From Epithemia pelagica (taxonomy: Eukaryota; Protista; Bacillariophyta), in the NCBI GenBank assembly GCA_946965045.2, contig OX337231.1:3720001-3784000 (forward strand): a stretch of DNA of 64,000 bases, given 5' to 3'. Below, in pieces: positions 2,982 to 61,305 of this stretch (its first letter is position 1; every line of letters starts with the position of its first letter). The notes beneath the pieces were generated by a model. It did no database searches and was not told the DNA's origin. It was given only the letters and a program-made list of their open reading frames with translations. A program made the translations under genes and the position numbers.

Positions 2982-4008
2982 AGGACACAGACCACATCTT
3001 GTTTTTTGTAGATACTCGCGCATTCTTCATGTTGGGGGTTAACATCATATACATATATATTGTATAGTCAAAAAGTGATTTTCAGAGCACCTTGCCCATT
3101 GTCCAACATGTTTTTCATCGTGGATCAGAAAAAGGATCGAACATTCTGACTTCCCAGTGGAGGCTCTTGAGTGAGCAAACTCGTAGTTCTTGACGACTTC
3201 AAAAGACAATGGCTACCATGGTCCTCGTTCCAACGGCCTCTTGGCCAATCGCCACGAGAGCACCTGCGACTTCCTGTACTTGTGGGATGTGGAGGAGGAG
3301 GATTCATTGGTTCCACTGTGCTACAGCGGTTTGTGGTGGGTCAAGGTTACACGAGAAGTAATCCCATTATTCGTTTCAGCAAAGTTGCGAGTCTGTTTTT
3401 GGATGGGTGAGGAACGACCGCTCCCCAAACAAGTGCAAAACCTGCAGTATTGTGATTGAGTGGAAAGAGCTACAGGCAGTCGTCCAAAGGATCACTGGAA
3501 ACGCATCAACCATCAACGTGTCGCTCAAAGTCCATTCGCCACATCTCTAGAAGAGGACTTGGTTCTTGGTTCGGCAGGAGAAGGGCGATCCCAAAATTAT
3601 TTGTGGAGACTTTTCGATTCCAGACTGCCGACGGACGCTTTCCGCGCCCATTCGTCCGAGCGTGCCTATCTCTATGGGGTTTGATCGTGGTCACGGTTTG
3701 GACCGGCTCGCAATCAATCCATCAGTGTCACGATGACCCCATCGCATCGAACGGCCCTCTCGTTCGAACCTCTTGGCCGATGGCCAAAGCGTGTTCGGTC
3801 CAATTCCATCTTTTATTACCTAGGATAAGTTCCTGTCAGGAGGAATGATGTTTCCGGACGATGGGAACCGATGGAAGTTCCTCGAACGGAGAGTCACAGG
3901 ATGTGCCTTTGTTTCAGGAAAATCTGAACTGCGGCCGCCCGAAATTTTGGGGCTCCTCCTCCACAACGCGCAAGTATCCCAGCAGAGCAACGATTCTTCT
4001 CGTAGAAC

Positions 4009-6021
4009 ATGGCGTGCCTGAAACACTATTTTCAGCCTCGTCTCTCTCAGCTTGCGTTCTCTCTCAGCAAGCATGGACAGGTTTGGAAGATGCTTCGATC
4101 ACGAACCCTCGCTGACAGGGACTCGTTGCTTCGTGTATTTGCCGGAATCCGATCCTTTTCGCGAAATACCAAGATAAGAAATTGGAGTACCAAGCAATCC
4201 TATGTGGATCTGCTGCTCTCGATGTCTCACCTTGTTGTTGGTCCTCTCGATCCGAACCATGCTCGGCTGACACTCTCTATACCGAAGGATCATGGTCCTC
4301 AAGACACATTCGACAGTGTTAGCATCATCGCCAAGTCAGGTTTGTTGAATTCCCCGCATATATTGGAAGATAACGAAGAAAATTCAACAGGGAATGACTT
4401 TTTGCCACACTTGCATGATCCAGGCGCTTACGATCATAGAATGGTTGAGAGCCACCGGGCCCGCAAAGGCGAACCACTACTTGGAACCAAGGTACCGACC
4501 AAGGCTGATCCTTTGTCAAAGGATCATAGCCGCAAAACCACACAGTACCTCTCGGATCGGCTCCCTCCGTCCAATGCTCGTGTTCACGGCACACCATCAG
4601 GCCGTGGACCAGCCCATGTAAATCGATATTTCCTGCAGTCCATGACAGACCAAGACGACCATTCTACAGCGAAACAAGCTGGGCCAGACATGCAGGATCC
4701 AAGCACGAGCGATTGTCCGGACGCGAGCCAACCGACCCGCAAGGATCAGGAACTACTTGGACCAACCACTGCTGACAGTGCCATTCAAGACAGAGAAACG
4801 CGTTACCACTTGGATCCGACCTCCCCGTGCAATAAGGATGTTCAAGGCATAGAAGACCGCGTTTCAGCCTACGAAGATATGTGTTTGCTTCAGTCCATGA
4901 ATAAGGAGGAAAGCGAGGACGACAACGCTACTTGGGAACAGTCTGAACCGCCTGTCCGCCAACGCAAGAGCGAAGGCCAGAGCAAAGGCCAAGCTGTAAA
5001 GGAGAAAGCTACATCGTCCGTTCCGAAACAGACTACTCAAATCGTTTCGGAGTCTATGACACGGCTCAAGAAGCAGATATCCCTCATCTACGGTAAAGTA
5101 CTTCGCAAGATATGGTTCCTGGTCCGCATGATACTCCTACTCACTCTGTATTGTCCTTTTTTCTATGACATGGTCGTTTCGTACCCAATGGATGTGGCAA
5201 ACTTGTGCAAAGCATCGTTGAGAGCAATCCTTGGAAAACTGCTGGTGGGAGGTGATGTATACAAACAGGCAACGGGCGAAACGCTTTCCAATGATGTCAA
5301 AGCAGAACGGCCGGAGCCTGTCGAAACTATGGAAACTAGTCCACAAACGGACCGTCTGGAGTTTGGTGAAGAAGAGAGCACTCAGTGGACAGACAAGGCT
5401 GCACCAGTTTTAGATGCTACATGGAAAGAGAAGGCTGCAACAGATGTGGAAATTTTTGGTCAACAAGACATTGCTACATGGAAAGAGAAGGCTATGCCCG
5501 TTGCCGAAAGACGCAAGTCCAACAAGTCCAACAGAGAATTGCGCCAAGAAGAGACTTTCAAGATTCGTTTTCAGCAGCTTAAAGACTTCAAGCGTGGAAA
5601 TGGGCATTGTTTAGTTCCTCAAAGATATCCCCCCAATATTCAACTTGGTCACTGGGTGCATCACACACGGCAACGATACACCAAGCGAATGGACGTTGAA
5701 AATGGTAGACCATCAAAATTGAAATGTTCCCCAATATCCCCGGATGAGATCTCGAAACTTGAATCAATTGGTTTTGAATGGAATGCTATTAAGGCGGTTT
5801 GGATGGAGAACTACGACAAACTTGAGAAGTATACCAAGAAGCATGGTAATTGCAATGTTTCCATCAACAGAGATGAAGAGTTGTGCAAGTGGGTCAACCT
5901 CCAACGAAAAAGGTACCAACGTAAGATTGATGGATCATCGAACTCCATGACAGATAGACAAATTAAATTGTTGGAAAGGATTGGTTTCAATTGGGATAAA
6001 AGTGAAAGCCACCCACGCTAA
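4009..6021 (+). CDS. HA-domain protein (670 aa): long low-complexity N-terminus, hydrophobic segment, C-terminal HA repeats
   Basis: Uninterrupted ORF. HA (PF03457-like) motifs RFQQLKDFKRGNGHCLVPQRYP..LGHWV..R, LESIGFEW, NYDKLEKYTKKHGNCNV, LERIGFNW. Confidence 0.88.
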   Translation: MACLKHYFQPRLSQLAFSLSKHGQVWKMLRSRTLADRDSLLRVFAGIRSFSRNTKIRNWSTKQSYVDLLLSMSHLVVGPLDPNHARLTLSIPKDHGPQDTFDSVSIIAKSGLLNSPHILEDNEENSTGNDFLPHLHDPGAYDHRMVESHRARKGEPLLGTKVPTKADPLSKDHSRKTTQYLSDRLPPSNARVHGTPSGRGPAHVNRYFLQSMTDQDDHSTAKQAGPDMQDPSTSDCPDASQPTRKDQELLGPTTADSAIQDRETRYHLDPTSPCNKDVQGIEDRVSAYEDMCLLQSMNKEESEDDNATWEQSEPPVRQRKSEGQSKGQAVKEKATSSVPKQTTQIVSESMTRLKKQISLIYGKVLRKIWFLVRMILLLTLYCPFFYDMVVSYPMDVANLCKASLRAILGKLLVGGDVYKQATGETLSNDVKAERPEPVETMETSPQTDRLEFGEEESTQWTDKAAPVLDATWKEKAATDVEIFGQQDIATWKEKAMPVAERRKSNKSNRELRQEETFKIRFQQLKDFKRGNGHCLVPQRYPPNIQLGHWVHHTRQRYTKRMDVENGRPSKLKCSPISPDEISKLESIGFEWNAIKAVWMENYDKLEKYTKKHGNCNVSINRDEELCKWVNLQRKRYQRKIDGSSNSMTDRQIKLLERIGFNWDKSESHPR

Positions 6022-6806: not shown

Positions 6807-7094
6807 TTTCAGAAGGCTTCACCACCACGAGAGAAGATGCGCCCCTTGCAGTGGTATTGACGAATTAGACAGAAAATATGAAACTCTTCATAAATCTGTA
6901 ATTTTCATTTTTTCGCCCTTCCAATTTCACCGCATCACTCTAGTTGTTGTCTGGGCGTTGATCGTCCGTTATGTTTTGGCCCCCTGATCACGATGGGGGA
7001 CTTCGGGGGAAAACCTCTCAAGCGAGGCGAATACTCTGCATGATGTTTCTCAGGATGTTTCGATGCGGCTTTGGAAGCAAAGCCACGAGTGGAA
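6807..7094 (-). repeat. Inverted copy of 1350-1655 inside the second cassette
   Basis: Reverse complement matches 1350-1655. Forward homology stops at 6369 (CCAACCAAG), 5 nt before where the inverted homology starts in copy 1. Confidence 0.9.
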
Positions 7095-7451
7095 TGACTC
7101 ATTATCGCTGGTGAAGCGTGTGGGTCCAATCATTCTCATGTGTGATTGTATTTATTTATATGAGCGTCCAACTAATCCCATAAACAAATTGCTGCATGCG
7201 AGAAGAAGCAGTCGCATGAATGGCATGACCGATCCTACACTTTTTGCGGAAAAAGTACACGTCTGAAGCAGAAATGGACAGCTCGATGGATTACTGTGAC
7301 ATCGCCACAGTTGAATAAAACCGAGTATCTCCTACCTCCTGGCTTTGTCGGATCCTCTAAAAGGATATTGCGCCCACAAATCAGTTGCTCAGAACTCTTC
7401 ACAACGAGCCAGAAATTCAAAGATACCTCAGCACTGAAGCTCTGAAGAACA

Positions 7452-8731
7452 ATGAAGTTGGTGCGACCTATTCCGTACAAAGCAGGCCATGTGACCATCG
7501 AAGCAGGGTCGACTTGTTCATCGAATGACGGCAAAAATTCTGTGAACTCAAGCAATGCGTCCTCCCTGGTTTTGACATCAGCTGATGTCCTACTTGGACG
7601 AGGCAGGGGCTCCTACTCCTGGACTGGAAATAAAATCTATCAAGAGCTCTTGACAAGATATGTTCCAGCCTACACAATGGCCAAACGAAACAAAGATAAA
7701 ATGCATATTACAGACGAGATTGTCGCCACAGTGAAATCGAGAGGAGGCAGATTTTTGGGTATGTGCCAATCCAAGACTGTTTCGGCTTCCAAAAGCCACT
7801 TGTATGAAATTTCGGATGCAGAAGCACGCATCACGGTTTCCCAGGTAAGCATTGGCTCATCGCAATGGCTTGTTTGATGTCGTATATGTGAGCCTCTAAC
7901 GTTCATTCCGGTGTTTTTTGCTCTATGCGTGTCTAGGCGATGAGGCATCGCCTTCGAGCGGCATTGAAAAAGAAGAAAAGAAGCTTACAAGCTCTCACAG
8001 AAACCCTGCCAGCTCCTGCACCATCATCATTGACCGGTCCCAAAGGCGCAAAGACATTTGTTCCGACCAGTCATGGATCCGAGCCATGCGCGAATACATT
8101 GAAGAAATACGTTTCAGACACACGATTGCGAAACACAACTACTTTCAATGATGGAGTAGCAAACTTGTCACAACAACACGAACCGAGGCCAGTTTCTCCC
8201 GTGGCTTCAACGTCAACACCTAGTGGCGGACGGTTCGATAGTGGAAGACTTGATTACCTGCTTCAAGATCCAACTTTCCGGGAGATTCTGGAAGATTTTA
8301 TGACAGAAGAACCGACAGACCAATCTTATGGGACAACAGATATGATACCTTTTTCACAAAGTTCCCAACTAAAGGACTCTACCAGTTCTGTAGTGCACTG
8401 CGTGCATGGCAGCCGTCGCCGCTCCTTACTTTCTCTGTCGTCTAAATCTTTCATGCGGAGCAAGACAATGGCCTCTGAAGGCATCGCTGCGTTGGCTGAG
8501 ACCATTCGATCGCAAAACTCAACGAGTGACTGCTGTAAAACGACGATGAAGAACCAAGACGAAAACGACCTTCTCTTGGCGGCATTGGATTTGCAGGAAC
8601 AAGATTTGTCTCGTTGGTCTTCGTCTATTTTGTTGCTCGGTGGAAGCGAGGCAAGATTGGAAGACAATTTGAACACAACACACGATGATGGCGCGCTTGA
8701 TTGGCGATGCATTTGCTACAAGGACACATGA
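7452..8731 (+). CDS. DUF6824-domain protein (paralog B), 2 exons; intron 7845-7936
   Basis: DVLLGRGRGSYSWTGN...GGRF...YEISDAEARITVSQ|AMRHRLR. GTAAGC donor, TAG acceptor. Confidence 0.85.
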
Positions 8732-39816: not shown

Positions 39817-42843
<3,027 letters not shown>

Positions 42844-44118
42844 GACTTTGGTCTTGTGGAATGAATCTGTGGCTCGTTTTCGTTTGTTCTTGTTGTTGTG
42901 GTGGTGGTGAAACAACTGCCACCTCAATCGTCTATTGGTTGGTTGGTTGGTTGGTTGGGATTCGCGCACAACACTATACTGTTTTGGGTGTGACGTTCAA
43001 CGACTCTCCCCCATTCTTCTTGTGTGTATCGTCGCAGAACTACTATAAATAATACAACCACAAGGATGTGTGAGAGAGAGACAACCCAAAACTAATAAGG
43101 AGTGATGGATTCCTACTTGTTCCAAAGCGCACAAGGAGGATGAGGATGATGCCAACCAAACGATGATGAGAGCGAGAGGATCCAAAAATCCGAACAGAGA
43201 CGACGAAGAAGAAGCAAGAAGCACAATCAATTGATGGATGTCGACGACGTACTCGTTCTGGTGTGCATCACCATCCATGATGGTACTGCGACCAAGCGCA
43301 CTGCCTCGGGGCATGGGCGACTACAATGGAGGTGTGCGACCGGATCTTTTTCGCGCGTGCTGCGGCACATGCCTCGCGTGCCGTGATGTGGCTTTGTTCG
43401 CCTTATTACTTAGGACTCCAACATCCGGAAGTATGGAGTGGAATCCAGCTGGTGGCAGCGACATGGTGAGGCGAACGCAACTGCACACATCCACCAAGTG
43501 CTGCTGTGGACCAATCATACGGCACAGCACGAGCGTACGTCGTCCGGATCGATGCCATGATTGGTGGCATGGTCTCTTGCGTGTTGGTACCAAATCCGAA
43601 CCTTCAAACAAACCACACCCGATCGCATGCCGAAAAACAAAAGTGAAGTGCAAGAGCAACTCGACGGACTGGGGTGCTTCTTGATTGGCATTCTGCGACA
43701 GTGATGTGCAGATTCTTTGACCCTCGACTGGCATCATTGATTCCATCCCAACACATTCTCCATTGACACTTCTCCCAAAGCACCCGACCAAGTCATTGTG
43801 TCTTCTCAAAAGTTCAGCGCCTTTCGTCGTTCAAACACCAAAGCAGTTTGGCATTCTCAGTCAGACGAGTGGAACGGCCGAGTCTACGACAACACCAAGA
43901 ACAAGCCACACTATTGGCGGTTGGTGTTGACACTCTTTTTGCATTTTCCAGTTCTTCAAACCTGCATTGGAGGTCACGTTTGACTGACACGATCAACGAC
44001 TCGATAGCCACAACGAATCTCCTTCCGTCAAGGTCATATCTTGGCGCAGCCGTGAATAGAAACAGGAACCCGTTCGGCACTTTTTTCGAGTAGACATTTT
44101 CGGTTCGTTCCTTCAAGC

Positions 44119-47267: not shown

Positions 47268-47470
47268 TTGCCATGTTTTCGACACGAGAGATTCAAAGTT
47301 TCACTGTTGGCAGCAGACGTTAATTTATTTATGCCGACGGTTATATTTTGCTCCGCTATCCGCTATTTTCCCCGCTATTCGGGGCCCTAAATAGCGGCAA
47401 AAATAGCGGATGGCGGAGCTGTTTAGCGGTTAGAGGAGATGGTGGAGTTCGATAGCGGGTGGAGATAGCC
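47268..47470 (-). mobile_element. Second copy of the Harbinger-like element left end (partial)
   Basis: Reverse complement of 11819-12036, ending in TIR GGAGATAGCC followed by TAA. Internal sequence beyond ~47268 differs from copy 1; the other TIR was not found. Confidence 0.88.
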
Positions 47471-49691: not shown

Positions 49692-50948
49692 ATGACAACG
49701 ACACTGAAAGAACAAGCATGGCAGTCGGGCCTTGTCCTGTTACAAGACGAGACACCGGAATGGAATTTCGAGGACTGGCCTCCTCTTGAGGGTGGATGGC
49801 GTTTTCGTCATGCTTTGGTCGTACTTTATCATCCCGATCCAGACCATGACAGCAACAACAACAACAACAAGAGACAAACGGTCGTCGTGTTGGGAGGAGC
49901 CGACAATCGATATAATACTACCAACTCCGTTCTGTTCCTGAATTTGGATGATGGCCAGAAGAAGCAGTGGCGAGACGGGCCACCCATGAACACGAGTCGT
50001 GAAGGACATGCCGCTGTGGTTTGCAACGGAGGGGTTTATGTTGTTGGAGGAGAAGACAGTTCATTTTTGACTTGCATCGAAAGAATTGATTCCACTGATT
50101 TGCTGCAAGAACCATCTTCGACTTTTAGCAGCAGCACAACACATGAGAGTTGTTGGACAAGATTGACCTGTCGGTTATCCGAGGAACGATGGGGATGTTG
50201 TGCTGTGGCAGTTCGCAACCGATACATTGTTGTAATGGGTAGTGGACGCAGCAATCGTTATTTGTCGTCGGTGGATATTTTGGATACCAGCAACCACACT
50301 GTCACTGCGGGACCAAACATGACTGTTCCACGAGCATGCTGTGCCAGTGCGGTCATTGGTCAACGCATCTTTGTGGTTGGAGGCTGTAACGACGAGGATG
50401 GCTATCTTGACTCGGTCGAGTATTTGGACTATGCAACACACTGTGACAGTGATGATGAGACAAACAAGGAAACTGGTTCGACGTTCCTTTCTTTCTCACC
50501 CACCTGGACCACTCATTCGGAGTTGAGGCTTGTCAATGTACAAAGTTCTATTGCCAGTTCTTGTGCCACGGTTGCCGTGGGATCGTGTCTGGTTGTGGCC
50601 GCAGGAAGCCGTCCAACCGTCCAAGTCTTGGATACGCACCGCAACAACCACGTGTGGAATCTCCCACCCTTGGGAAATGACCGCGATGGCTGCACTCTGG
50701 TGACGGTTGCCAATCAAGTTGCCGTGATTGGTGGACGGTACAATTCTACCTGTGCGACAGTACCAGTAATGGATCGGAATTCGTGGTGTTTTCGTCGACT
50801 GCAATCGAACGGATGGTCTCATTCACTTAAAGGTAGTATGGGTACTTTCCGAGATGCGCATGATATCTCACCCTTGTCGTCGTCGTCCACATGGACAGTA
50901 CCTTGGAAACGAGCCAGGCTCAATCCATGCCAAACTGATGGAGGGTAG
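49692..50948 (+). CDS. Kelch-repeat protein
   Basis: Repeated Kelch signatures VVVLGG...W..GPPMN..R.GHAAVV...VYVVGG; GPNMTVPR..CASAVIG.RIFVVGG; VAVIGG. Confidence 0.92.
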   Translation: MTTTLKEQAWQSGLVLLQDETPEWNFEDWPPLEGGWRFRHALVVLYHPDPDHDSNNNNNKRQTVVVLGGADNRYNTTNSVLFLNLDDGQKKQWRDGPPMNTSREGHAAVVCNGGVYVVGGEDSSFLTCIERIDSTDLLQEPSSTFSSSTTHESCWTRLTCRLSEERWGCCAVAVRNRYIVVMGSGRSNRYLSSVDILDTSNHTVTAGPNMTVPRACCASAVIGQRIFVVGGCNDEDGYLDSVEYLDYATHCDSDDETNKETGSTFLSFSPTWTTHSELRLVNVQSSIASSCATVAVGSCLVVAAGSRPTVQVLDTHRNNHVWNLPPLGNDRDGCTLVTVANQVAVIGGRYNSTCATVPVMDRNSWCFRRLQSNGWSHSLKGSMGTFRDAHDISPLSSSSTWTVPWKRARLNPCQTDGG

Positions 50949-53439
50949 GATGAAATCTAGCCGTTTCAAATGTCTTGAGTGGTTGGTTGACTTGTGTGTT
51001 TTCTACGTTGGATTGCAATCCTAGAACCTACACAAGTCGTTACTCAAACGTATTAGAAAGAACATGTTGCAAGAAAGAAGGTGCTTGTTGGTTGTCAAGT
51101 GCGGGAAAGGAACGACCCGATTTTTTTACCTCGACACAAGTGGCTTTGGCCATATACCCTGTTACCTGTCAGCAGTTGTGGGACAGTGCGAGAATTGTGG
51201 TCTCTTCTTTCCTCCTTTTCTCTACTAGGAACGATGGATCACAACTACCGTAGTGCAGTGAATATAGAGTCCCTGTACTACGTGCTCCTACTACAGTAGC
51301 CTCTCATCAGGCGAGGACGGATATTGGGTGGAACCAGGGCCATTTTGGCAAACGTTTGCTGCCATGGTGGTGGTAGATTCAAACGACGGCCTCTTCTCTG
51401 TCCACGAACATGACGGCTAAATCCTGATGATACGATATAGATTGGTAGAGGATTCATTGTGGTGAGAGAGGAAGAAGGAGACAATGGCACCATGGTTGGG
51501 CACCTGGAATTGTACCTTGAGATTTTGAGAAAGAGGAGGCCTCGACCGAATCGCCAAGGGATTTTGCAAAACGGACTATTGGACGATATAGGTACTAGTA
51601 CAGGACAAAAAGTCTGCTCACTAGCTATAATGTCCCGAGGCTGAAGAGGACAGAGTTCCGAGTTTCCATGCTTGTACGTGGTCTCTTGTCGGCCATGGAA
51701 CATTCGTGTCGCCTGAAACCCGATACACGACTTGACTCCAATTTTTCTCTTGGACCAGGAGCGACTCACTTCTCCACTACTTTGGAAACACTATAACCGA
51801 GTCCACATTCTTCTTCGTGTCCAAGAATTTCGTTGAGGCTTTTTTGTTCGTTGCACGGGATACCAGTTGCTTGTTTCTACTTGTTCGTATTCCGATGAAG
51901 GCCAACGACTGTCTTCTCCACCCGCTCCGCCTCGTTCCTTTTGGAGTGGCTCCCAAAGTGCACACAAGACTCTCACTGTTGAGACGATTTGCTGGGAGTA
52001 TTATAGTAGCTCCTATAGCCTTGTGCTTCGCTGAGAGAGTGACTTCCCTCTTGGACCGTTTCTTTGTTCTCCTCCGTGCCTTGATCTATTCGGTAAAAAA
52101 TAAAAAAAGAGAGATGGAACGTTAGTTTTCCCAAGGGTGGGAGAACCGCATGCTTTGGTATCGGAAATTACCTTGGGCAATTCTCGAGGCGTTCTGTTCC
52201 AAACGGAACAACCAGTCGGATGGGTCCTCTTCGATCCTCTCTTTGCGTAGCACACATGATACCCTTTCGAGGATGGTGGATCTGAAACAAAGAATCACAC
52301 GTCACACACCAATGTAGTAAGAATCCGACGGTGCAATGTACAACAACACGATCCATCGTGGATCACACACAAGGGAGGAGAGGAGAGGGAGGCTGAAAAA
52401 TGCGAGGTCGAAAGAATTGAAGATTACAGTATGCCGCGGATCCTTTTGAAGCTCACGTATTCGTCGTTTTATACTTTAAATTTCATCTTCGACTCTTTCG
52501 ACTTCGCTTTTTTCTGCCTCCCTCTCCTCCCGTTCCAACCGTGTCTCCTCCCGGTCCATCCTCCGAGCGGGGAGGATGAATCCTCCACCGAGACGGTTGC
52601 ATGCACCAGACGTTGTTGCACTAGCAGAAAAACAACGAGAGAAGAGACAATCGATGGTGCCGACAAAAGACGAGACCACACGCCAAATCCACACACACAC
52701 ACACAAAAAGCAAGGAGGACTGTCGTTGCAAGGTACGTTGTCATGTGCATCATTCTACCGCCATGGCCGTTCAATGTTCAAAATTTTCGATTTGTGGTCC
52801 GTCATGACACTGTCCGTCCGTAGGCCGTGGATGGATGGATTCGCACAATAGTTCCATTTCGTCGTTGCTGCCATGTCCTTCTTTGAATTCACTCACCTGA
52901 ATACATCTGTGACCTGTTTCCAAGTGCTTTCATCGAGTTGAGAAAAAGGGCCATACCTCCCAATGATCTACGTACATTCGTTCCACAGTTGCCGTTATGG
53001 ATAATAATATGAGCAGCCGCGTCTCCATCCACATCTGCTGGTCCCCCGGCGTTCCCCCAATTATGGGGAAATGAAAATCGACAGATCGGCTGGCTCGCCG
53101 TTTGGCCCCACAATTTTGTGTTTGTGGCTTTGGAGAGCATGGCCACACATCAACAATGGTGTGGTGTTGGAGATTGATCTTCTCGCTACAGAACTATACA
53201 CAAGACAAGATGTACCGGTCTCTCTACAGGAGAGAGCAAGAATTCTAGACAATTCCATCCGTGACACGAATGAAAGATTCCATATCGAATGGCAAGGACG
53301 CACGAGGAACGTAATTTCAACACTCGTTCATTGTCTATTATATGTGGATGGATCGATCTCTACAGAGACTTGCGCAAAACAGCACTTGCGTCACGTTGTG
53401 TTTTCAAAACACCCAGGATTGTGCACTATACTGCAGGAT

Positions 53440-55281
53440 TCATTCTTCCATGCGGGCCGCCGCGTTGGTGCCGGTAGCAGGTTGGGGAAGCACACTGTCC
53501 TTTGGTTTGGAGGATGACGACGACAATGATGGGACGGCCAACTGTCGTGCTTTGCGCAACAGAGGCTCGAGCATGTGTTTGCAATGACCGACATTGTCGC
53601 TAATTTCGACAAACTGGACTGTGGACCACTGACTTGCCTTGAGGCGTCGTACCGTGGGTCCCAACAAGGGTTTCCAAATGCGAAAGCGCGCCGCCTTCTT
53701 TGTTTGGGCAGCAGCAAGAGCCTTGTCGTGGTGGTGTCGTCGTCGAGAATGCTGGCTACTACTTTTCTGGAGGTGTTGTGCCACGCAATGAGCCTTGTGT
53801 ATCACGTCTCGGGTTTCCGGACGCACGGGAGAAACCGAACAATTGTTGTTGTTGTTGTTGTTGTCGTTTCTTGGATGGTCTACACCAGCAGTCGGTGCGG
53901 AGGAGGTGGTGTACTGCTGCTGCTGCTGCTGGGACTCGTCTGCAGATGGGGCAGCATCCAGTATCTTCTCTTGAAAATGGAAACGAGCAATTTCTCGAAA
54001 CAGTTCATTGTGGCCCAGTGTAATGCCCAGTGTCTGCTGTGTCTTGGTGGTCGCGGCGGCGATGGACCACGGTGCGGCTAGTCTTGCTGCCATATTACTA
54101 GTAGAGGGACCAGATGCATCCTCCTCGTCGTTGGGGTCTTGTGGTGTTTGGGGTTCGGCCCACGAGGCGAGACCTTGTTGCACGAGCTGCCGAATTCGTT
54201 CTGGTTTGGACTCGGGATTCGTCCAGTCGTCGTCGTCGTGTTTTGTGGTGCGCACGACAAACTCACTTTCGACGGGTTCAAAGTTGGAACAGCCACACAC
54301 AAAGTGCAAATCGTCGGGAAAGGTTTGTGGAATCAATCCACCCAGGAGGACAAGGACACTAGGAGGAGGATGAAATGGCACGTTTGGTTGGGTTGGAATC
54401 CTCATGGCTTGTTGGTTCGGGAGCATCGACTGCTGCGGACCACGCACCGATACTGCGGCCTGTGGTACGGTGCGGGTGGGTGGGTCTCGTGGTGGTGGTG
54501 GTGGAGGACGGGCCCGTGTAGCAGCGGCGGGAGGATTGCCACGGACCACCATGGGTGCCGCTTGCGGTTGGGACCATTGAGCAATGGCTGGAATGCGTTG
54601 TAGACCTAATTCTGGACTATACAACAAACGATACAACCGCCGATCCATGGTACCGGGCACTTTCATGCAGCTTCGGCTCGGATTTGGAATGGTTGCTCCA
54701 CAAGTGATGGAGGATACCGGTGGACTGGTGGAGGGAGATTTCTCAGCAGTGGTTTGTGGTCCCATCATTGTACTATTATGAAGTTCACAAAACCAATGGG
54801 TTCCCACAAGGGGTCGCCCATCTCGAGTGGCACTCCCTGGAAGAATCACTTGATAGAGTGTCTGCGCCCGTGTCAGGACCAAGCCCACTGCCAGAATCTC
54901 CACAATGCGCCGGAGGGAAAAGACGGTGCGCATGGCTAGGGCAAAGTGGGGAGAAAATCCAACCGTGGCCCAATCATCCACCATGTCATACAAGAGGCTC
55001 ATACACACGTATCGGTCTTGTTCCAACAAGACGGCACGACCATGGTAGGGGTCCTGCGCATTGCCCCAAGCCAGGGCGACTGCCTGGGCCCAGACCTCGG
55101 AATCCGACGAATGCCGGGCCTTGTCCTCCTGAAGTCGTTGCAATGCCTTTTGAAAGACGCTGTCTTCGAAACGGGCAACGTACCGTTGGATCTGGGAAAC
55201 GTAATGATTCCAACGTGAATGGTCCAATGCTGACGAGGAGGACGCTGCTGTTGGCGATATCCGCACTTTGGTCATTTCCAT
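53440..55281 (-). CDS. Hypothetical protein with one copy of an unrecognised ~190-aa domain plus Pro-rich linker and C-terminal region
   Basis: Long ORF; the N-terminal domain aligns with both halves of 58277-59659. Confidence 0.8.
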   Translation of the reverse strand: MEMTKVRISPTAASSSSALDHSRWNHYVSQIQRYVARFEDSVFQKALQRLQEDKARHSSDSEVWAQAVALAWGNAQDPYHGRAVLLEQDRYVCMSLLYDMVDDWATVGFSPHFALAMRTVFSLRRIVEILAVGLVLTRAQTLYQVILPGSATRDGRPLVGTHWFCELHNSTMMGPQTTAEKSPSTSPPVSSITCGATIPNPSRSCMKVPGTMDRRLYRLLYSPELGLQRIPAIAQWSQPQAAPMVVRGNPPAAATRARPPPPPPRDPPTRTVPQAAVSVRGPQQSMLPNQQAMRIPTQPNVPFHPPPSVLVLLGGLIPQTFPDDLHFVCGCSNFEPVESEFVVRTTKHDDDDWTNPESKPERIRQLVQQGLASWAEPQTPQDPNDEEDASGPSTSNMAARLAAPWSIAAATTKTQQTLGITLGHNELFREIARFHFQEKILDAAPSADESQQQQQQYTTSSAPTAGVDHPRNDNNNNNNNCSVSPVRPETRDVIHKAHCVAQHLQKSSSQHSRRRHHHDKALAAAQTKKAARFRIWKPLLGPTVRRLKASQWSTVQFVEISDNVGHCKHMLEPLLRKARQLAVPSLSSSSSKPKDSVLPQPATGTNAAARMEE

Positions 55282-55729
55282 GTTTGTCTGTCGCTTGAGG
55301 TTTGTGTCGTTTTCAATTTTATGAGGAAAGGCGACTCTGGGATAACGGATGGAATATGGAATGCGGATCGAGCGTCTGTCTGTCTCTCCTGTGTACATCC
55401 ATCCGGTCGCATATTGTAGTCCTCATCGTTTGGATATCAATTATTTCTCTAATTGGGTTATATAAAAAAGATTCACTACAACCGCTGAGAATTTGTGAAC
55501 AAGCCGAGACCCGCAACTTTCCACGTCTCATTTGCGGAGTTGATAGAGATGGGAAATCAAGTTTTGGTGGGAACGATCTACAAGCAAATGCGACTTTCAC
55601 GTACCGCAACGCATCCGTCCTGGAAACGATGCAGTGAGTCAGGTAGGTCCGAAAGGACCATTGTCGTTGGCCGTGTGATCATTGGGATCCATATCTAAAA
55701 GTAATCTCGCCGAAACGAGCACCTAGATA

Positions 55730-57790
55730 ATGAATTCCAGAACAAACGAACAGCACCAAGAAGAGACCCTTGAGAGTGCAGCTGAATCCGCGACAACACG
55801 GTCCCCAAATGAAGATTGTCCTTCGGAAAGAGCCTTAGTAGGAGACGTGGATAGGACCAAATGCAAAGATCACCCGGCCAGTATAACCCGTGGTGGACTT
55901 GAACAAAGTGTCTCGGAAGCAGATCCACAGGCTTGCTCGTACGGCAACCATGTCGTCGACGAGGACGACGATTTGTATGGCAGCCATATCCTCGACGAGG
56001 TTGAGGATGATGATGACGACCTTACCAGAGCCATGCAGGAATCCCTCAAAGACGCAGTGTTAGTTTACGACACACACTCAAAGCCACCGCCAGGCGAAAA
56101 AGGTGGTGTTTCAGACTTGCAACGTACAGAACCCAACGAAGATTATGACGCAGATCTCGCAACGGCTCTTGCGGCATCTCTAGCCAAACTTGGGAATGTA
56201 CACCACCAGGGAAAGTACACCAGCAGCAGTCAGAATATTGAAGGAAATGCTCTGCGAGTTGGTGCTGCAGCACCAAATCAGAGTACTTTGAGCGACGAGG
56301 CCAATGCCAGGGCTCTTGATGTACCCTTCCAGGACATGAGCCAACTCTTGGATTCTCCCAAACAAAATACAGTAGAGCAAGAGGAGGATTACGACGCAGA
56401 TCTAGCCGCAGCTATCGATGCATCTCTCGCCGTCAAGTTGGGGAATGAAGACGACCAGAAAAAGAAGCCTTCCGTAATGCACGGTCAAGATGCCAAAGAA
56501 GAGGCCGATTCCATGAAAGCCACCCTGTATCCCAAGCCATGCATTGGCGATCGCGCACAGAAACAAAACTCCAAGGATCGCACAGGCAAAGAACTACAAC
56601 CAACAGAAAAAGATGGCGTTCCTCACCAGCAGCCCACAGAACCGGATAAAGAATATGATGCAGATCTCGCACAAGCAATTAAACCATCTCTTGTCGAACT
56701 TGGGAGTGTGTCTGACGACGAGCTTACGAAACCATTTGCAGTGCCTATTCAAGATACAGTAGAAACGGTTTGCCCGATGGAGGGCATAACATATTACTGG
56801 CCTTCCTGTAAGCATGCCCAGAATTTAGATGATTTGGATGGTCCCGTCAATGAATGTGCCAAGAGCGGTGCCGAAGAATTAGGGCTAATATGGCGCAGCG
56901 ATGCCGACTATGCCAGGGCCTTACAACAGCAATTCGATCTCTGTGATCAACGCTATACAAAAGGACTGGAACATGTCCACTTTGCCTCCACACATACGGG
57001 ACGAGCCTGGCAATTGGTGGAACTCGTGTTGAATCTCCAACAAGAATACCGACTCCAACAAACCCTGGAGCAGTCACGTCTGAAGTTGCAGACAACACCG
57101 GTCTCATACGCCATGAAAGAAACAAGTTGGATCCAGGCCATTGCATTGGATGATATGATTCCCATGGCGGAAAAGCTGATTGCCACACAAAACGAGTATC
57201 GGCATCAACGCAAACCCGTCCATGTGGATATTGGGTACCACTGGACACGGCTAGAAAATTTAGGTCGAATCCAAACCAACGGATTGCTCACCAAAGAGGA
57301 ACGAGATTCCAAACTGATTCGGGTTTCTAACAATGGTTCGTCTTTTGGGGATGGAATATATACCGCCAACGATCCTTACTCTTATTGTGGTCGATACGGA
57401 CGAATCTGCATCATGGTGGCGCGTCTCCGGGGAATGCTCACCACAAAACGTTTTCACGAAAGGGGTGATACCCTTGTGGGCCGCAACGGTCTAGTGCACG
57501 TGTTGGCCACATCGGGACAATGCATTCCACTCATGTATTTTTATGCTGATTTGATTGACCCCGAAGATCCCGATTTCCCCGGCAATACATGGGTCCACCA
57601 GCATCATGTCAAGCTACAAGAAATGGTTGACAGAGTCTTCAATCAAGAAAGTCGTGACGGTAATACAGTTTCCTTCCAGACCCCGGTTGCCAAAGTGTTG
57701 TGTGCGGAGGATGCAAAACACCACTTTGACTCTTTGAACAGGTGGAGAGAAGACGACCGTCCAAGTTTAACCAAACCCAACCTATTTTAG
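55730..57790 (+). CDS. UIM/MIU ubiquitin-binding repeats + PARP-like ADP-ribosyltransferase domain
   Basis: UIM-like DDDLTRAMQESL, DYDADLATALAASL, DYDADLAAAIDASL, EYDADLAQAIKPSL; MIU-like DADYARALQQQ. ART motifs GYHWT, N...I..NGL, G..FGDGIYTA, VL....QCIP. Confidence 0.82.
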   Translation: MNSRTNEQHQEETLESAAESATTRSPNEDCPSERALVGDVDRTKCKDHPASITRGGLEQSVSEADPQACSYGNHVVDEDDDLYGSHILDEVEDDDDDLTRAMQESLKDAVLVYDTHSKPPPGEKGGVSDLQRTEPNEDYDADLATALAASLAKLGNVHHQGKYTSSSQNIEGNALRVGAAAPNQSTLSDEANARALDVPFQDMSQLLDSPKQNTVEQEEDYDADLAAAIDASLAVKLGNEDDQKKKPSVMHGQDAKEEADSMKATLYPKPCIGDRAQKQNSKDRTGKELQPTEKDGVPHQQPTEPDKEYDADLAQAIKPSLVELGSVSDDELTKPFAVPIQDTVETVCPMEGITYYWPSCKHAQNLDDLDGPVNECAKSGAEELGLIWRSDADYARALQQQFDLCDQRYTKGLEHVHFASTHTGRAWQLVELVLNLQQEYRLQQTLEQSRLKLQTTPVSYAMKETSWIQAIALDDMIPMAEKLIATQNEYRHQRKPVHVDIGYHWTRLENLGRIQTNGLLTKEERDSKLIRVSNNGSSFGDGIYTANDPYSYCGRYGRICIMVARLRGMLTTKRFHERGDTLVGRNGLVHVLATSGQCIPLMYFYADLIDPEDPDFPGNTWVHQHHVKLQEMVDRVFNQESRDGNTVSFQTPVAKVLCAEDAKHHFDSLNRWREDDRPSLTKPNLF

Positions 57791-58276
57791 GAGGCCACTA
57801 AACATGATACTCAGTGAGCCAAACCCTTGGTCACGTCGCTCGCAAAATGCCGTGCTATCTGAAAATGGGTTCAGCGGTTCATTTTTCCTTTTCACTATTG
57901 CCTACCATTCAGTTATTGACACGCTCACCACCATCATAATTCTTTTGGACCTACTTCCAAAGGATGCTCTCATAAAGCCCAAAGTGGTATCATTAGATCG
58001 ACCACCAGCCAATTCCCCGATCGATATATATTATGGTGAAACAAGAAGTCTTGTCGGAGACATATCTTTCAATTATAAAGGTGTTTGCGCCAATGGATTT
58101 CTTATTTCTTCCAAGGAATATGGCATTTAGCTTTCAAATATATGTAGGACTGGTAATTCGGTCACGGACAAAACATGTAGAATGAATTCCGCCTCGAGCG
58201 TTGTGCAGGGCCGTTTAGAGGAGCATGTCGAATAGTCGTAGGTGTTTGGATCTCACAGTGATATTTTATTTTATTT

Positions 58277-59659
58277 TTACAAGGAACTCGTCATGGGTCG
58301 ATAGACAAAGGACGCCACTTGTGGCTTGCAGCACCGAGAAAAGAGTTCATCGTTTTGGAGACCCAATGTCTTGCTGTACAGCAAACGATAGAGCCGTTTG
58401 TTCATGGTTCCGGTACCTGGGTAGCTGCTTAGCAAGGTTGCCCATCGATCTCGCTCCGAGGGGGTTTCAAAGTTTTCCAGTTTCACATGCAAATCCGAAT
58501 ACCAATGCATACCTGTAATCGTTTTGCCATCCTCCGTGGGTGCGGATTGGACCATCTTGTACAAGGCCTGTGCACGATCCATCACCAAACAGACGCCGAG
58601 AATACGGGCAATCCGTCGCGGTTTGAAAATCTTTTGTATCGCGTTTTCAAATTCGACCGAAAGTTCCTGTTCCTCCCATTCATTGACGAGTTCGTAGAGC
58701 AGCGTCAGGCACGATTTTCGGTCATGGTTGAGTTGCAAGACCCGAGGGTTGGTAGGATCATCTCGAAACAAGAGGTACAAGTTCTTGGCCCATGTTTCGG
58801 GATCTTGCGATCCCCGATCCTTGTACAAACGCGTCAGCCGGTCTTGAAACGACGGTTCATCGTAAATATTGACAAAGAGTTGGACGATAAGGTTGGGATC
58901 GGACAATCCGACTTTGGCACGTTTGAGACGCTCCACAAACTGATTGTTTTCTTGTGCCGTCTCAGCGAGCGTGGGACCCGGGGCTCTTCGTTTCGTTCCC
59001 GACAACACCACGGTGCTAGTTGTCTGTGGTGGCGGCTGGACAAAGGTTGCCAAGGCTGGAAGAGACCAACGGACAATATCCGCGTCTTGGAGCAGACCAA
59101 AGGCCTTGGAATGAATAATCTTGTAGAGACGGCGATTCATGGTGGGCGAGCCTTGGTACGTGGTCAAGGCCATTTTGAGATTTTCCAAGGCCTCGTCCAG
59201 GTGCGAAGGAATGGAGGTTGCTTCCATCGAATTGTCTTTTTGCTCTTGTTCGAGCAGTGCGACATGTTGTTTGGCATACCAATGCATCCCATAAAAGGTG
59301 GAGGATGGTAGCTGCATTCGATACAAGGACTGGGCACGGTCCATGACAAGACAGATAAAGAGAATTTTGCGCAAGCGCGATACTTGAAAGACGTGGACAA
59401 TGTCTTGTTCAAAGTCGTCTGGACTCGATGCCGTTTCCCAGGCATTGACCAGATCGTACTCCAACTGTAGGCACTTTTTACGATCTCGGTTGAGCAGTGA
59501 GGCATGCGGATGGGTCGGATCCTTACAGAGTGTCTGGTAGAGATTCTGGGCCCATGGTTCGGGAGATTGATTTCCCAAATCATGGTACAATCGATTCAAA
59601 CTTTCTTGGAAGGAAGGTTCCATGTAGGCAGTGAGAAAAGACTGAACGGTCGTCGACAT
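58277..59659 (-). CDS. Hypothetical protein made of two tandem copies of the unrecognised ~190-aa domain
   Basis: Internal duplication: EPSFQ.L.RLY.D.G.Q.PE.WA.NLY...DPT.P...LN.DRK.CL.L.Y.LVN.WE...LVMDRAQ.LY..GMHWY...TMN.RLY...S...GL occurs twice. Confidence 0.88.
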   Translation of the reverse strand: MSTTVQSFLTAYMEPSFQESLNRLYHDLGNQSPEPWAQNLYQTLCKDPTHPHASLLNRDRKKCLQLEYDLVNAWETASSPDDFEQDIVHVFQVSRLRKILFICLVMDRAQSLYRMQLPSSTFYGMHWYAKQHVALLEQEQKDNSMEATSIPSHLDEALENLKMALTTYQGSPTMNRRLYKIIHSKAFGLLQDADIVRWSLPALATFVQPPPQTTSTVVLSGTKRRAPGPTLAETAQENNQFVERLKRAKVGLSDPNLIVQLFVNIYDEPSFQDRLTRLYKDRGSQDPETWAKNLYLLFRDDPTNPRVLQLNHDRKSCLTLLYELVNEWEEQELSVEFENAIQKIFKPRRIARILGVCLVMDRAQALYKMVQSAPTEDGKTITGMHWYSDLHVKLENFETPSERDRWATLLSSYPGTGTMNKRLYRLLYSKTLGLQNDELFSRCCKPQVASFVYRPMTSSL

Positions 59660-61305
59660 GGTTCTGGGTTTTGTTTACAGGTAAGGAGGGTGTGTGTTGC
59701 TTTTGCGTTTTTGAATGGTTTGGAGTTGTGAGAGCATCGTGGATATTTTTTGTGGTGATGGAATCCCCGAGTCGCGAACTGCTGCGAGCGGGGCTTGCGG
59801 GCTTGTTGCGAGACGCTCTATCTCATTGTACTCTTTTTCTGACAGTCCATGACTTGCGACAAGGTTGCGACCGCAGGATGCAATCCCACAAAATGGGAAC
59901 ACCATGACTGTCATGTTCTCCTGTGCCGTGGTCGATTATGGATGATGGGAATGATGTCCCTCATCAACTTCCCCCACGATGTTGAATCGTTGTTCTCTTC
60001 TAGTAGAGACACTTGCAATCGCAAGAGACCCAATACGACCCATCCCAGAGGAACACTTGTGCCTCGCAACTCGCAACATAGTATTGGACTCCTACTGTTG
60101 GAGCGAACGGCAAAAGAGCCTCCGAGCAAGGTGGAGAGGATACAATCCCATCATACAGGATGAAAAGACCATGACTGTCCTGTGCCGAACTGACACAGAA
60201 AAGGATTGTAGGGATGCCACTCGGCATCGCAAGCAAAAAGAGAATGCCAATGCCACGTCTTCGAAACAAGAGTTTGCAATCTTCTCTCTGGGCTAGAGAA
60301 GACATGACAAACACCACCAGCATCTATATTCCGCTTTACTCGTCGAGGTGTGTGAAAAAAGCTGCGTTTGCTCTCCTTTGACATTTCCTCTCGTACTAGT
60401 AGGTAATACGTTGTCAGACAACAAGAAACTATGGAGCATAGTTTTCTAGAACACACCGCCCGGGGAAATCATAAAGAGAGAGAGACAAGGACATTTTCCT
60501 CTCATCAAGTTTGCCATTCTGGTTCGCACCATGAAGGAGGGCATGTCTTGTGCAAGTCGAAAGTCAATCTCGTTTCTCGTTTGTCGTCCACTCCGCGAAG
60601 GCTATCCACAGGGTAGTGCGTGGAAACGGGTCCGCGCCCTTTTTCCCCCAACCAACAACGGACTCGGTTGGGGGATGGGGCAATGGCCCAGCAGTCTGTC
60701 CGTCGGCCATCCACGACCGGCGAGGCGTGGATTGTTTAGCGAATGCGATTTGGCGGTTGTGGGCGGGAACGTGGCTCGCCGTTCGCACCAAGTCTAGTAT
60801 TGCCCCAGCAGGTGGGCGGGCGTGTTGCGGTCCATCGTCTCGTGTTGTGGAACCACAATAGAAGACAAAAGAGCCGGTGCCGTTCGCACGGCAACAAGAG
60901 TCCTCAACAGTGCTCGCCGGAATCGAAAATTCCTCTTGTCGGACTTTGGCGCATCACAGCTCCCTTTGTGTGTGTAAATTGTTATTGAGTGTTGTATTGG
61001 GGGCAAACGATACTCTCTATTGATTGTATATACAAGAGAAGAGAACGACTACTACTAGCGACAACACCAACCACCATAAGTCCCTGGCTTAGAAAGGGCG
61101 AGCCCATTTTTGTTGGTGTGTGTGTGTGCTTGCACTGTCGATAGCCTTTTGCACCTCTTCTTCTTCGAAAGCCAGCAAAAACAAAACACTACTCACTCGA
61201 TTTGAGTGACATCCTTCATCGGGAGATCCTCTAGTTGCCAACAACAACAACACAACAACAACAATTTGCCACTCCTCTCCAGTAGAATAGTCTCTTCGTT
61301 ACAAG

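What the first reader, a model, noticed from the sequence alone, without database searches (positions are those of the whole stretch)
53440..59659. Candidate system: ubiquitin-binding ADP-ribosyltransferase flanked on both sides by genes with an unrecognised domain
A ~190-aa, probably helical domain with invariant positions (FQ, L.RL..D, E.WA, DP, DR..C..L.Y..V..W, R...IL..LV..RAQ.LY, G.HW...H, TM..RLY....S...GL) occurs once in 53440-55281 and twice in 58277-59659. Between them is the UIM/MIU-ART gene, head-to-head with the first (~450 bp spacer) and tail-to-tail with the second. I do not recognise the domain. Conserved Cys, His, Trp and Arg suggest a ligand or catalytic site. The layout hints at a linked ADP-ribosylation/ubiquitin module (reader, eraser or substrate), but the ART gene could simply have landed between two paralogs.
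Basis: partly seen in the sequence, partly recalled or inferred. Interest (0 to 1): 0.75.

Follow-up and report, generated by a model that had tools for sequence, protein, structure and literature searches.

The report
Diatom EP-like domains flanking a PARP-like gene
The two genes flanking a ubiquitin-motif PARP-like gene in this diatom carry an unannotated 200-residue domain predicted to fold like the EP domain with which plant EDS1/PAD4 proteins sense TIR-made nucleotide signals, and relatives of this domain are fused to TIR enzymes, hinting at a plant-like NAD-based signalling axis in diatoms.

Summary
One copy of a ~200-aa domain lies in gene A (53440-55398, -) and two in gene C (58277-59659, -). 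They flank a gene with four UIM motifs and a PARP10-like fold.

The domain matches no Pfam, PDB-sequence or PADLOC family. Its AlphaFold model is very confident (pLDDT 94.8). The only clear structural matches are the EP domains of plant EDS1/PAD4 (Z 7.6-10.9; next fold 5.5). EP domains are the receptors of TIR-made ADP-ribose-derived nucleotides and are described as unique to seed plants.

- **Family size:** about 200 clusters, with named members only from Epithemia and Entomoneis.
- **Fusions:** Glu-bearing TIR domains (including one gene in this genome), and also LRR, trypsin, cyclase, UEV, C2, bromodomain and MLKL_N.
- **TIR neighbour:** another copy in this genome lies 1.4 kb from a TIR gene.
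- **Two subtypes:** the halves of the two-domain proteins are old, distinct subtypes, which recalls the EDS1/PAD4 pair.

The link to the ART gene is weak. The trio recurs only as a 94% identical mirror duplication 12 kb away. In Epithemia clementina the C and A orthologues are consecutive annotated genes about 32 kb apart, and no ART lies within 10 kb of either.

The scan noted the mirror copy before (s1-252314, s1-252392). Function is inferred, not shown.

The parts
53440..55398 (-). Gene A: one EP-like domain near the N-terminus, then a long, partly low-complexity tail with conserved motif islands
   Evidence: ORF. It is collinear over its whole length with E. clementina ACA910_010422 (P0040), E 1e-57.
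54523..55200 (-). EP-like domain of A; it groups with the C-terminal copies of the two-domain proteins in the quick tree
   Evidence: Profile hit E 8.9e-111; tree placement; dN/dS 0.18 against the mirror copy.
55399..55729 (.). Head-to-head spacer between A and the ART gene; a possible shared promoter region (inferred)
   Evidence: Coordinates; no expression data.
55730..57790 (+). UIM-bearing PARP-like ADP-ribosyltransferase gene
   Evidence: ORF; weak Pfam PARP (E 0.005) and UIM_2 (E 0.004) hits.
56006..56695 (+). Region holding four UIM cores (phi-x-x-A-phi-x-x-S-phi) that start near residues 98, 144, 226 and 314
   Evidence: Regex count 4 against a mean of 0.025 in 2000 shuffles.
56867..57787 (+). 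Conserved C-terminal region: an MIU-like motif (residue 391), a helical part and a PARP-like catalytic fold with GYHWT (502), GDGIYTA (540) and HVLATSGQ (590)
   Evidence: Alignment A5; AF2 pLDDT 76.7; Foldseek PARP10/13/15/12/14, E 5.5e-5 to 1e-3, prob 1.0.
58277..59659 (-). Gene C: two EP-like domains in tandem and nothing else
   Evidence: ORF; two profile hits.
59030..59659 (-). EP-like domain 1 of C (N-type subtype)
   Evidence: Profile hit E 2.6e-110. It lies in the N-type clade, supported 100/99.
58292..58894 (-). EP-like domain 2 of C (C-type subtype); this is the copy that was modelled
   Evidence: Profile hit E 2.3e-107; AF2 pLDDT 94.8, pTM 0.90; EP-domain matches at Z up to 10.9.
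52824..59916 (.). Arm of a recent inverted (mirror) duplication. The partner arm lies outside the window at G000:C4:3791969-3798705. The second domain of C (about 58114-58855) has no counterpart there.
   Evidence: blastn: 52824-58113, 94.1% over 5.3 kb; 58856-59916, 89.4%.

Best explanation
A and C belong to an unannotated diatom protein family. It is defined by a ~200-residue, mostly helical domain whose predicted fold is that of the EP domain of plant EDS1/PAD4/SAG101. In plants, two paralogous EP domains form a pocket that binds nucleotides made from NAD+ by TIR enzymes. I infer that the diatom domain is a signal-receiving or signal-relaying module of an NAD+/TIR-based, immune-like pathway. 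I also infer that it works as a pair of two old subtypes: joined in one chain in C, and supplied in trans by single-domain proteins such as A. Shown here: the repeat, the family, the fold match, the TIR fusions and the TIR adjacency, and the split into two subtypes. Inferred: ligand binding, pairing and an immune role. The gene between A and C is a PARP10-like, probably mono-ADP-ribosylating enzyme with four ubiquitin-interaction motifs. Its place between A and C looks like a lineage-specific arrangement that was then copied by an inverted duplication. It may share a divergent promoter with A, but a functional link to the EP-like genes is not established.
For: Repeat: E 7e-35 and 2e-26. Family: about 14 loci and 18 copies in this genome; 202 clusters at 50% identity with E<=1e-3; members in Epithemia clementina and in Entomoneis transcriptomes. 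Fold: AF2 pLDDT 94.8 and pTM 0.90 from only 17 sequences. In VIA-align against 48,161 chains the top three are PAD4 and EDS1-family EP domains (Z 10.1, 9.8, 8.4; rmsd 2.9-3.3 over 133-138 residues) and the next is 5.3. In the second look the top 11 entries are all EDS1 or PAD4 (Z 7.6-10.9) and the next is 5.5. The aligned ranges (PAD4 295-450, EDS1 367-555) span the published ligand contacts: PAD4 R314, K379/380, Y383, F387; EDS1 D469-R493. TIR link: 5 of 73 long members carry TIR, confirmed for P0037, P0068, P0078, P0161 and the own-genome ORF at G000:C3:3367684-3368691. All keep the W..EL glutamate. In this genome an EP-like gene lies 1.4 kb from a TIR gene, next to LRR ORFs. Other partners are typical of signalling or effector proteins: LRR, trypsin, cyclase, UEV, C2, MLKL_N. 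Subtypes: the N-terminal copies of 13 two-domain proteins plus 6 single-domain proteins form a clade (UFboot 100, SH-aLRT 99) that excludes their C-terminal copies. The domain is under purifying selection, dN/dS 0.18. Conserved Arg, Asn, His and Trp residues are the kind of residues a nucleotide pocket would use.
Against: There is no sequence-level link to the EP family. Pfam at E<=10, PF18117 against the six-frame genome at E<=10 and a family profile against PDB sequences all give nothing. Foldseek gives no E<=0.001 match; EDS1 rows appear only at prob 0.57-0.66. The structural alignment covers 133-144 of 207 residues at 7-14% identity, and the tool warns that helical models can reach such Z values by common arrangement alone. 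There is no lipase-like domain. I could not superpose coordinates, so I do not know whether the conserved residues line a pocket. Some fusion partners (bromodomain, C2) are not immune-specific. There are no expression or biochemical data for these genes. The C-type copies do not form a well-supported clade in the careful tree.
Confidence: 0.5

Rival explanations
1. A, the ART and C form one functional module. The PARP-like enzyme makes ADP-ribose marks, perhaps on or near ubiquitin, and the EP-like proteins read them, are modified by them, or regulate the enzyme.
For: The layout is tight: a 331-bp head-to-head spacer and a 486-bp tail-to-tail spacer. By my rough estimate from the locus counts, about 14 EP-like loci and 3 intact ART genes in 60.5 Mb would fall within 5 kb of each other by chance less than 1% of the time. 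The trio is kept as a unit in the mirror copy and in the related assembly ERZ21939226. There, a 93% orthologue of C also lies tail to tail with a divergent ART paralogue, 63% identical in the ART domain. EP domains bind ADP-ribose-derived ligands. One family member carries a ubiquitin-binding UEV domain. ART relatives are fused to Deltex RING-DTC. In E. clementina the ART genes and the C/A orthologues lie on one contig within 13 annotated genes.
Against: All instances trace to one ancestral locus in close relatives. In E. clementina there is no ART within 10 kb of the C or A orthologue and no EP-like ORF within 10 kb of the ART clusters. None of the other roughly 12 EP-like loci in this genome is near an ART, and the third ART paralogue (C4:3850511) has no EP-like neighbour. 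No ART fusion occurs among 160 family members. EP-like genes cluster with each other anyway (C3:3449352 and 3458366; ACA910_004381/004383 and 020395/020401).
Confidence: 0.2
2. The domain binds no ligand. It is a protein-protein adaptor, like Death-fold or effector-associated domains in other conflict systems, and couples sensors (LRR) to effectors (TIR, protease, MLKL_N, cyclase) through pairing of the two subtypes.
For: One domain is joined to many different effector-type and sensor-type domains. There are two old subtypes, found fused or as separate genes. Plant EP domains are themselves heterodimer interfaces and docking sites for helper NLRs.
Against: Strongly conserved Arg, Asn, His and Trp residues across 107 divergent copies fit a defined binding site better than a plain interface. 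This rival also overlaps the main explanation, because plant EP domains do both.
Confidence: 0.2
3. The EP resemblance is a chance convergence of a helical bundle, and the family has an unrelated role, for example nuclear or chromatin-associated or structural. The TIR fusions are then just one of many shuffled architectures in a fast-evolving lineage-specific family.
For: No sequence similarity to EP. Foldseek is not significant. Partners include a bromodomain and C2. The family is known only from a few diatom genera.
Against: Eleven independent EDS1/PAD4 entries outrank every other fold by 2-5 Z units, in both a full 48,161-chain search and the second look. The independent link to TIR, the very enzyme class upstream of EP domains in plants, would be a striking coincidence.
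Confidence: 0.1

Closest known systems
EP domain of the plant EDS1 family (EDS1, PAD4, SAG101; Pfam PF18117)
   Same: It is the best and only clear structural match (Z 7.6-10.9, rmsd about 3 A over 133-144 residues). Both are helical domains of about 200 residues. Both come as paralogous subtypes that could pair. Both are linked to TIR domains.
   Different: There is no detectable sequence similarity. There is no N-terminal lipase-like domain. Here the domain stands alone, sits in tandem, or is fused directly to TIR and other domains. It is found in diatoms, whereas the literature places the EP domain only in seed plants. Ligand binding is untested.
Human PARP10 (ARTD10) and the mono-ART PARPs 12, 13, 14 and 15
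   Same: The middle gene's C-terminal domain has their fold (Foldseek E 5.5e-5 to 1e-3, prob 1.0). It keeps the His (GYHWT) and Tyr (GDGIYTA) motifs and has a non-Glu third position. Like PARP10, it carries UIMs N-terminal to the catalytic domain.
   Different: Pfam PARP scores 16.7 bits, below the 26.7-bit cut-off. It has no RRM, macro or WWE domains. It has its own conserved helical region and an MIU-like motif. My assignment of the third triad residue (Leu592) rests on a motif analogy recalled from memory.
PARP9-DTX3L / Deltex pairing of an ART-fold protein with a RING-DTC ligase
   Same: More distant relatives of this ART domain are fused to RING plus the Deltex C-terminal domain (P0176, P0178), so the family is tied to ubiquitin chemistry.
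   Different: In this gene the ubiquitin link is through UIMs only. No Deltex domain is in or near the locus.
Bacterial Thoeris and other TIR-signal/sensor pairs
   Same: The logic is the same: a Glu-bearing TIR, which resembles ThsB-type TIRs, is coupled to a dedicated non-catalytic domain that could sense its product.
   Different: The sensor fold differs (SLOG or macro in Thoeris). No PADLOC model matches the EP-like domain.

Membership tests
EDS1_EP (PF18117) | Sequence match to the family HMM above its cut-off (23.1 bits) | tested here: not met
   No hit for A or C at E<=1, for 52 family members at E<=10, or for the six-frame genome at E<=10.
EDS1_EP (PF18117) | EP helical-bundle fold | tested here: met
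   Z 10.1, 9.8 and 8.4 against 5.3 for the next fold. The top 11 rows are all EDS1 or PAD4, at Z up to 10.9. The model has pLDDT 94.8.
EDS1_EP (PF18117) | N-terminal lipase-like alpha/beta-hydrolase domain in the same protein | tested here: not met
   C consists of two EP-like domains only. A has the domain at residues 70-290 and no Pfam lipase hit.
EDS1_EP (PF18117) | Heterodimer of two paralogous EP domains forming a nucleotide pocket with conserved basic and aromatic contacts | not testable with these tools
   Two subtypes exist and Arg, Trp and His residues are conserved. No coordinates or multimer model were available to place them.
EDS1_EP (PF18117) | Functional coupling to TIR enzymes | tested here: inconclusive
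   There are fusions to Glu-bearing TIR domains and one adjacency. These show association only, not signalling.
PARP catalytic domain (PF00644) | Pfam match above the gathering score | tested here: not met
   16.7 bits against a cut-off of 26.7, E 0.005.
PARP catalytic domain (PF00644) | ART fold of the PARP type | tested here: met
   34 PDB matches at E<=0.001; every listed row is a PARP catalytic domain, and PARP10 is best at 5.5e-5.
PARP catalytic domain (PF00644) | H-Y-E/Phi NAD-binding triad | tested here: inconclusive
   His and Tyr motifs are invariant in 12 sequences. The third position is inferred as the invariant Leu, by analogy only.
UIM (ubiquitin-interaction motif) | Acidic run followed by phi-x-x-A-phi-x-x-S-phi | tested here: met
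   Four cores against 0.025 expected. Pfam UIM_2 scores 17.4 bits, below its 21-bit cut-off. Ubiquitin binding is untested.
TIR domain (PF01582/PF13676), for the fused relatives | Pfam match above the cut-off and the catalytic Glu in the W..EL motif | tested here: met
   E 5.5e-16 to 3e-18. Glu is invariant in 6 sequences.

The most novel reading that the evidence does not exclude
Diatoms have a true counterpart of the plant TIR-to-EDS1 axis. EP-fold proteins, acting as intramolecular or intermolecular pairs of two subtypes, bind nucleotides made from NAD+ by TIR enzymes (and perhaps by ART enzymes) and switch on effectors. The EP receptor fold would then not be a seed-plant invention. It would be either much older or have arisen twice for the same job.
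Probability: 0.3. Interest if true: 0.9.

Novelty: new variant of a known kind. Interest (0 to 1): 0.75.

Why it matters
The plant literature I read calls the EP domain unique and places the origin of the EDS1 family in seed plants. How TIR signals are received in organisms that have TIRs but no EDS1 is an open question. This diatom genome has at least 23 TIR-matching loci. A lineage-expanded family with an EP-like fold that is fused to TIR domains with the catalytic Glu gives a concrete, testable candidate receptor outside plants. It also gives a handle on innate immunity in diatoms. My searches found no paper that links EDS1 or EP domains with diatoms.

Tried and rejected
- **Sequence and fold libraries that gave nothing for the domain:** Pfam on A and C, Pfam on 52 members at E<=10, PADLOC, ESM Atlas, a family profile against PDB sequences (only chance hits to antibody frameworks), PF18117 against the genome, Foldseek against PDB and Foldseek against BFVD viral structures.
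- **ART by sequence alone:** single-sequence and profile searches against PDB gave only a marginal DarT hit, E 0.29. The fold search settled the question.
- **ART fusions:** I looked for an ART domain fused to the EP-like domain among 160 family members and found none.
- **Positive selection:** between the mirror copies, dN/dS is 0.18-0.72, which gives no sign of it.
- **The divergent C-ART locus (L050):** I tried to place this locus of assembly ERZ21939226 in this genome. It maps to no single allele; its flanks hit C4:3.62 Mb at 67-89%. I therefore use it only as a related arrangement.
- **Neighbours:** the nearby genes (P450, Kelch, several ORFs without a family) gave no further link.
- **Word search with the EP-TIR protein:** it added only E. 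clementina.
Full report
**What is there.** The window is G000:C4:3720001-3784000 of a 60.5-Mb, 23-contig eukaryotic genome. The nearest named proteins are from the diatom Epithemia clementina. Three uninterrupted ORFs occupy the finding:
- A: 53440-55398 (-), 652 aa.
- ART gene: 55730-57790 (+), 686 aa.
- C: 58277-59659 (-), 460 aa.

A matches both halves of C (E 7e-35 and 2e-26).

**The middle gene.** Pfam gives only sub-threshold UIM_2 and PARP hits. Four UIM cores are present, against 0.025 expected in shuffles, and an MIU-like motif sits at residue 391. An AlphaFold model of residues 380-686, built from 12 homologues, has pLDDT 76.7. Its Foldseek matches are PARP10, then PARP13, 15, 12 and 14 (E 5.5e-5 to 1e-3, prob 1.0). 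The His (GYHWT) and Tyr (GDGIYTA) motifs are invariant. I infer the third triad position to be the invariant Leu592, by analogy with H-Y-I/L mono-ARTs; I recalled that analogy from memory and did not test it. More distant relatives are fused to Deltex RING-DTC. This agrees with the earlier notes s1-242496 and s1-252392.

**The flanking domain has no sequence-level family.**
- It has no Pfam family, even at E<=10 over 52 members.
- It has no PADLOC match.
- A family profile finds no PDB sequence match.
- The ESM Atlas returned no usable hit.

**The domain defines a real family.**
- There are about 14 loci and 18 copies in this genome, including one pseudogene.
- There are 202 clusters at 50% identity with E<=1e-3 in the 1.84-billion-protein library.
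- The members that carry an organism name are from Epithemia clementina, and from Entomoneis sp. CCMP467 and Entomoneis paludosa transcriptomes, so the family is transcribed. Most members are unnamed.

**Fold.** With only 17 sequences, AlphaFold2 gives pLDDT 94.8 and pTM 0.90. The model has ten helices and two short strands.
- Foldseek against PDB finds nothing at E<=0.001. EDS1 complexes appear among the weak rows at prob 0.57-0.66.
- VIA-align against 48,161 representative chains puts three EDS1-family EP domains on top: PAD4 in 7xey_B (Z 10.1, rmsd 2.9 over 133 residues), 8zf0_C (Z 9.8) and EDS1 in 4nfu_A (Z 8.4). The next fold scores 5.3.
- In the second look, the top 11 entries are all EDS1 or PAD4 (Z 7.6-10.9). 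CRM1 follows at 5.5.
- The aligned ranges (PAD4 295-450, EDS1 367-555) include the residues that contact pRib-ADP in the published structure.
- PF18117 finds nothing in the six-frame genome.

So this is a fold-level resemblance. It is not family membership by sequence.

**Independent link to TIR.**
- Five of 73 longer family members carry a TIR domain C-terminal to the EP-like domain.
- One such gene is in this genome, at C3:3367684-3368691 (TIR_2 E 5.5e-16).
- All keep the Glu of the W..EL motif.
- At C16:2.87 Mb, LRR ORFs, a TIR ORF (PF01582 E 1.8e-7) and an EP-like gene lie within 6 kb.
- Other fusion partners are LRR, a trypsin-like protease, an adenylate/guanylate cyclase, UEV, C2, a bromodomain and MLKL_N.
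- No member is fused to the ART domain.

**Two subtypes.** In a maximum-likelihood tree of 47 domain copies, the N-terminal copies of 13 two-domain proteins plus six single-domain proteins form a clade (UFboot 100, SH-aLRT 99). That clade excludes the C-terminal copies of the same proteins. A's domain groups with the C-terminal copies, with weaker support. The tandem duplication in C is therefore old, and its two halves have stayed distinct. This recalls the EDS1/PAD4 heterodimer, in which two paralogous EP domains build one pocket. The best-conserved residues over 107 non-redundant copies are W133, G130, P193, L113, R61, A110, W37, D108, R109, F92, N167, R169 and H138. I could not place them on the model.

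**Is the ART linked?**
- The trio is one arm of an inverted duplication. Window 52824-58113 matches G000:C4:3793438-3798705 at 94.1% identity, and 58856-59916 matches 3791969-3793041 at 89.4%. The spacer between the arms is 12 kb. The mirror copy of C has lost its second domain.
- dN/dS between the copies is 0.18 for A's domain, 0.72 for A's tail, and 0.45 for the ART and for C.
- The related assembly ERZ21939226 has the trio. It also has a 93% orthologue of C next to a divergent, 1294-aa ART paralogue.
- In E. clementina all these genes lie on one contig. The ART genes ACA910_010409 and 010414, with further unannotated ART ORFs, lie at 1.18 and 1.34 Mb. The C orthologue 010421 lies at 1.472 Mb. 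The A orthologue 010422, which is collinear with A over its full length, lies at 1.504 Mb.
- There is no ART within 10 kb of either orthologue, and no EP-like ORF within 10 kb of the ART clusters. An 11-kb stretch between the two orthologues was not seen.
- No other EP-like locus in this genome is near an ART.

The C-A pair is therefore ancestral. The ART's position between them is lineage-specific. A functional link remains possible, through a shared divergent promoter or through the ubiquitin ties of UEV and Deltex, but it is unproven.

**Comparison and novelty.** The plant literature I read calls the EP domain unique, says it uniquely defines the EDS1 family, and dates that family to seed plants. 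Searches that combined EDS1 or EP domain with diatoms or Foldseek found nothing relevant. I file the flanking domain as an EP-like fold in a new sequence family with new architectures, not as a member of PF18117.

The scan had already noted the mirror copy of this locus (s1-252314; ART copy s1-252392).

**Limits.**
- The fold evidence rests on a predicted model and on one in-house aligner.
- No residue-level superposition, multimer model, expression data or biochemistry was available.
- The taxonomic breadth of the family is only partly known.

Noticed in passing
G000:C3:3367684-3368691 (L045:1429-2616:+; L055:5618-6802): This genome has its own EP-like + TIR fusion gene (396-aa ORF, TIR_2 E 5.5e-16). 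The second half of its EP-like domain is degenerate: the G.HW motif is missing. A 2OG-Fe(II) oxygenase ORF lies just upstream.
   Followed up: partly
G000:C16:2872001-2882000 (L053): A cluster of LRR ORFs (2003-3868, +), a TIR ORF (4461-5705, +) and an EP-like gene (7068-8000, -) lies within 6 kb. It may be a split sensor, enzyme and receiver set.
   Followed up: partly
G000:C6:3154711-3155076 (L040:394-2901:-): An 836-aa ORF joins a partial EP-like domain to a bromodomain (E 5e-19).
   Followed up: no
window 53440-54520 (C-terminal tail of A): The mostly low-complexity tail (Pro-, Gln- and Asn-rich) holds short islands conserved with the E. clementina orthologue: CGCSNFEP, LGHNE.FR, FR.WKP and FVEI..N.GH..MLEP.LRKAR. 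This may be a further small domain. dN/dS of the tail between the mirror copies is 0.72.
   Followed up: partly
G000:C4:456325-457407 (L005, L039): A decayed copy of gene C, 64-84% identical in pieces, is broken by TAA stops and frame changes.
   Followed up: no
L050:1-360 and L050:17853-18267: The ends of this related-assembly locus match dozens of sites across G000, at 82-99% identity. They are probably high-copy mobile-element termini.
   Followed up: no
window 47350-47419: A 70-bp stretch matches its own reverse complement at 86% identity (a palindrome).
   Followed up: no
window 39817-42969 (-) and 49692-50948 (+): The neighbours are a cytochrome P450 ORF (E 1.4e-50) with a long N-terminal extension and a Kelch-repeat gene (E 2.7e-25). 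Neither has an evident tie to the finding.
   Followed up: no
L057 and L058 (E. clementina JBGMNV010000066, 1.17-1.35 Mb): The ART family is tandemly expanded in E. clementina. At least five ART-domain ORFs lie in two clusters, and some are not in the annotation.
   Followed up: partly
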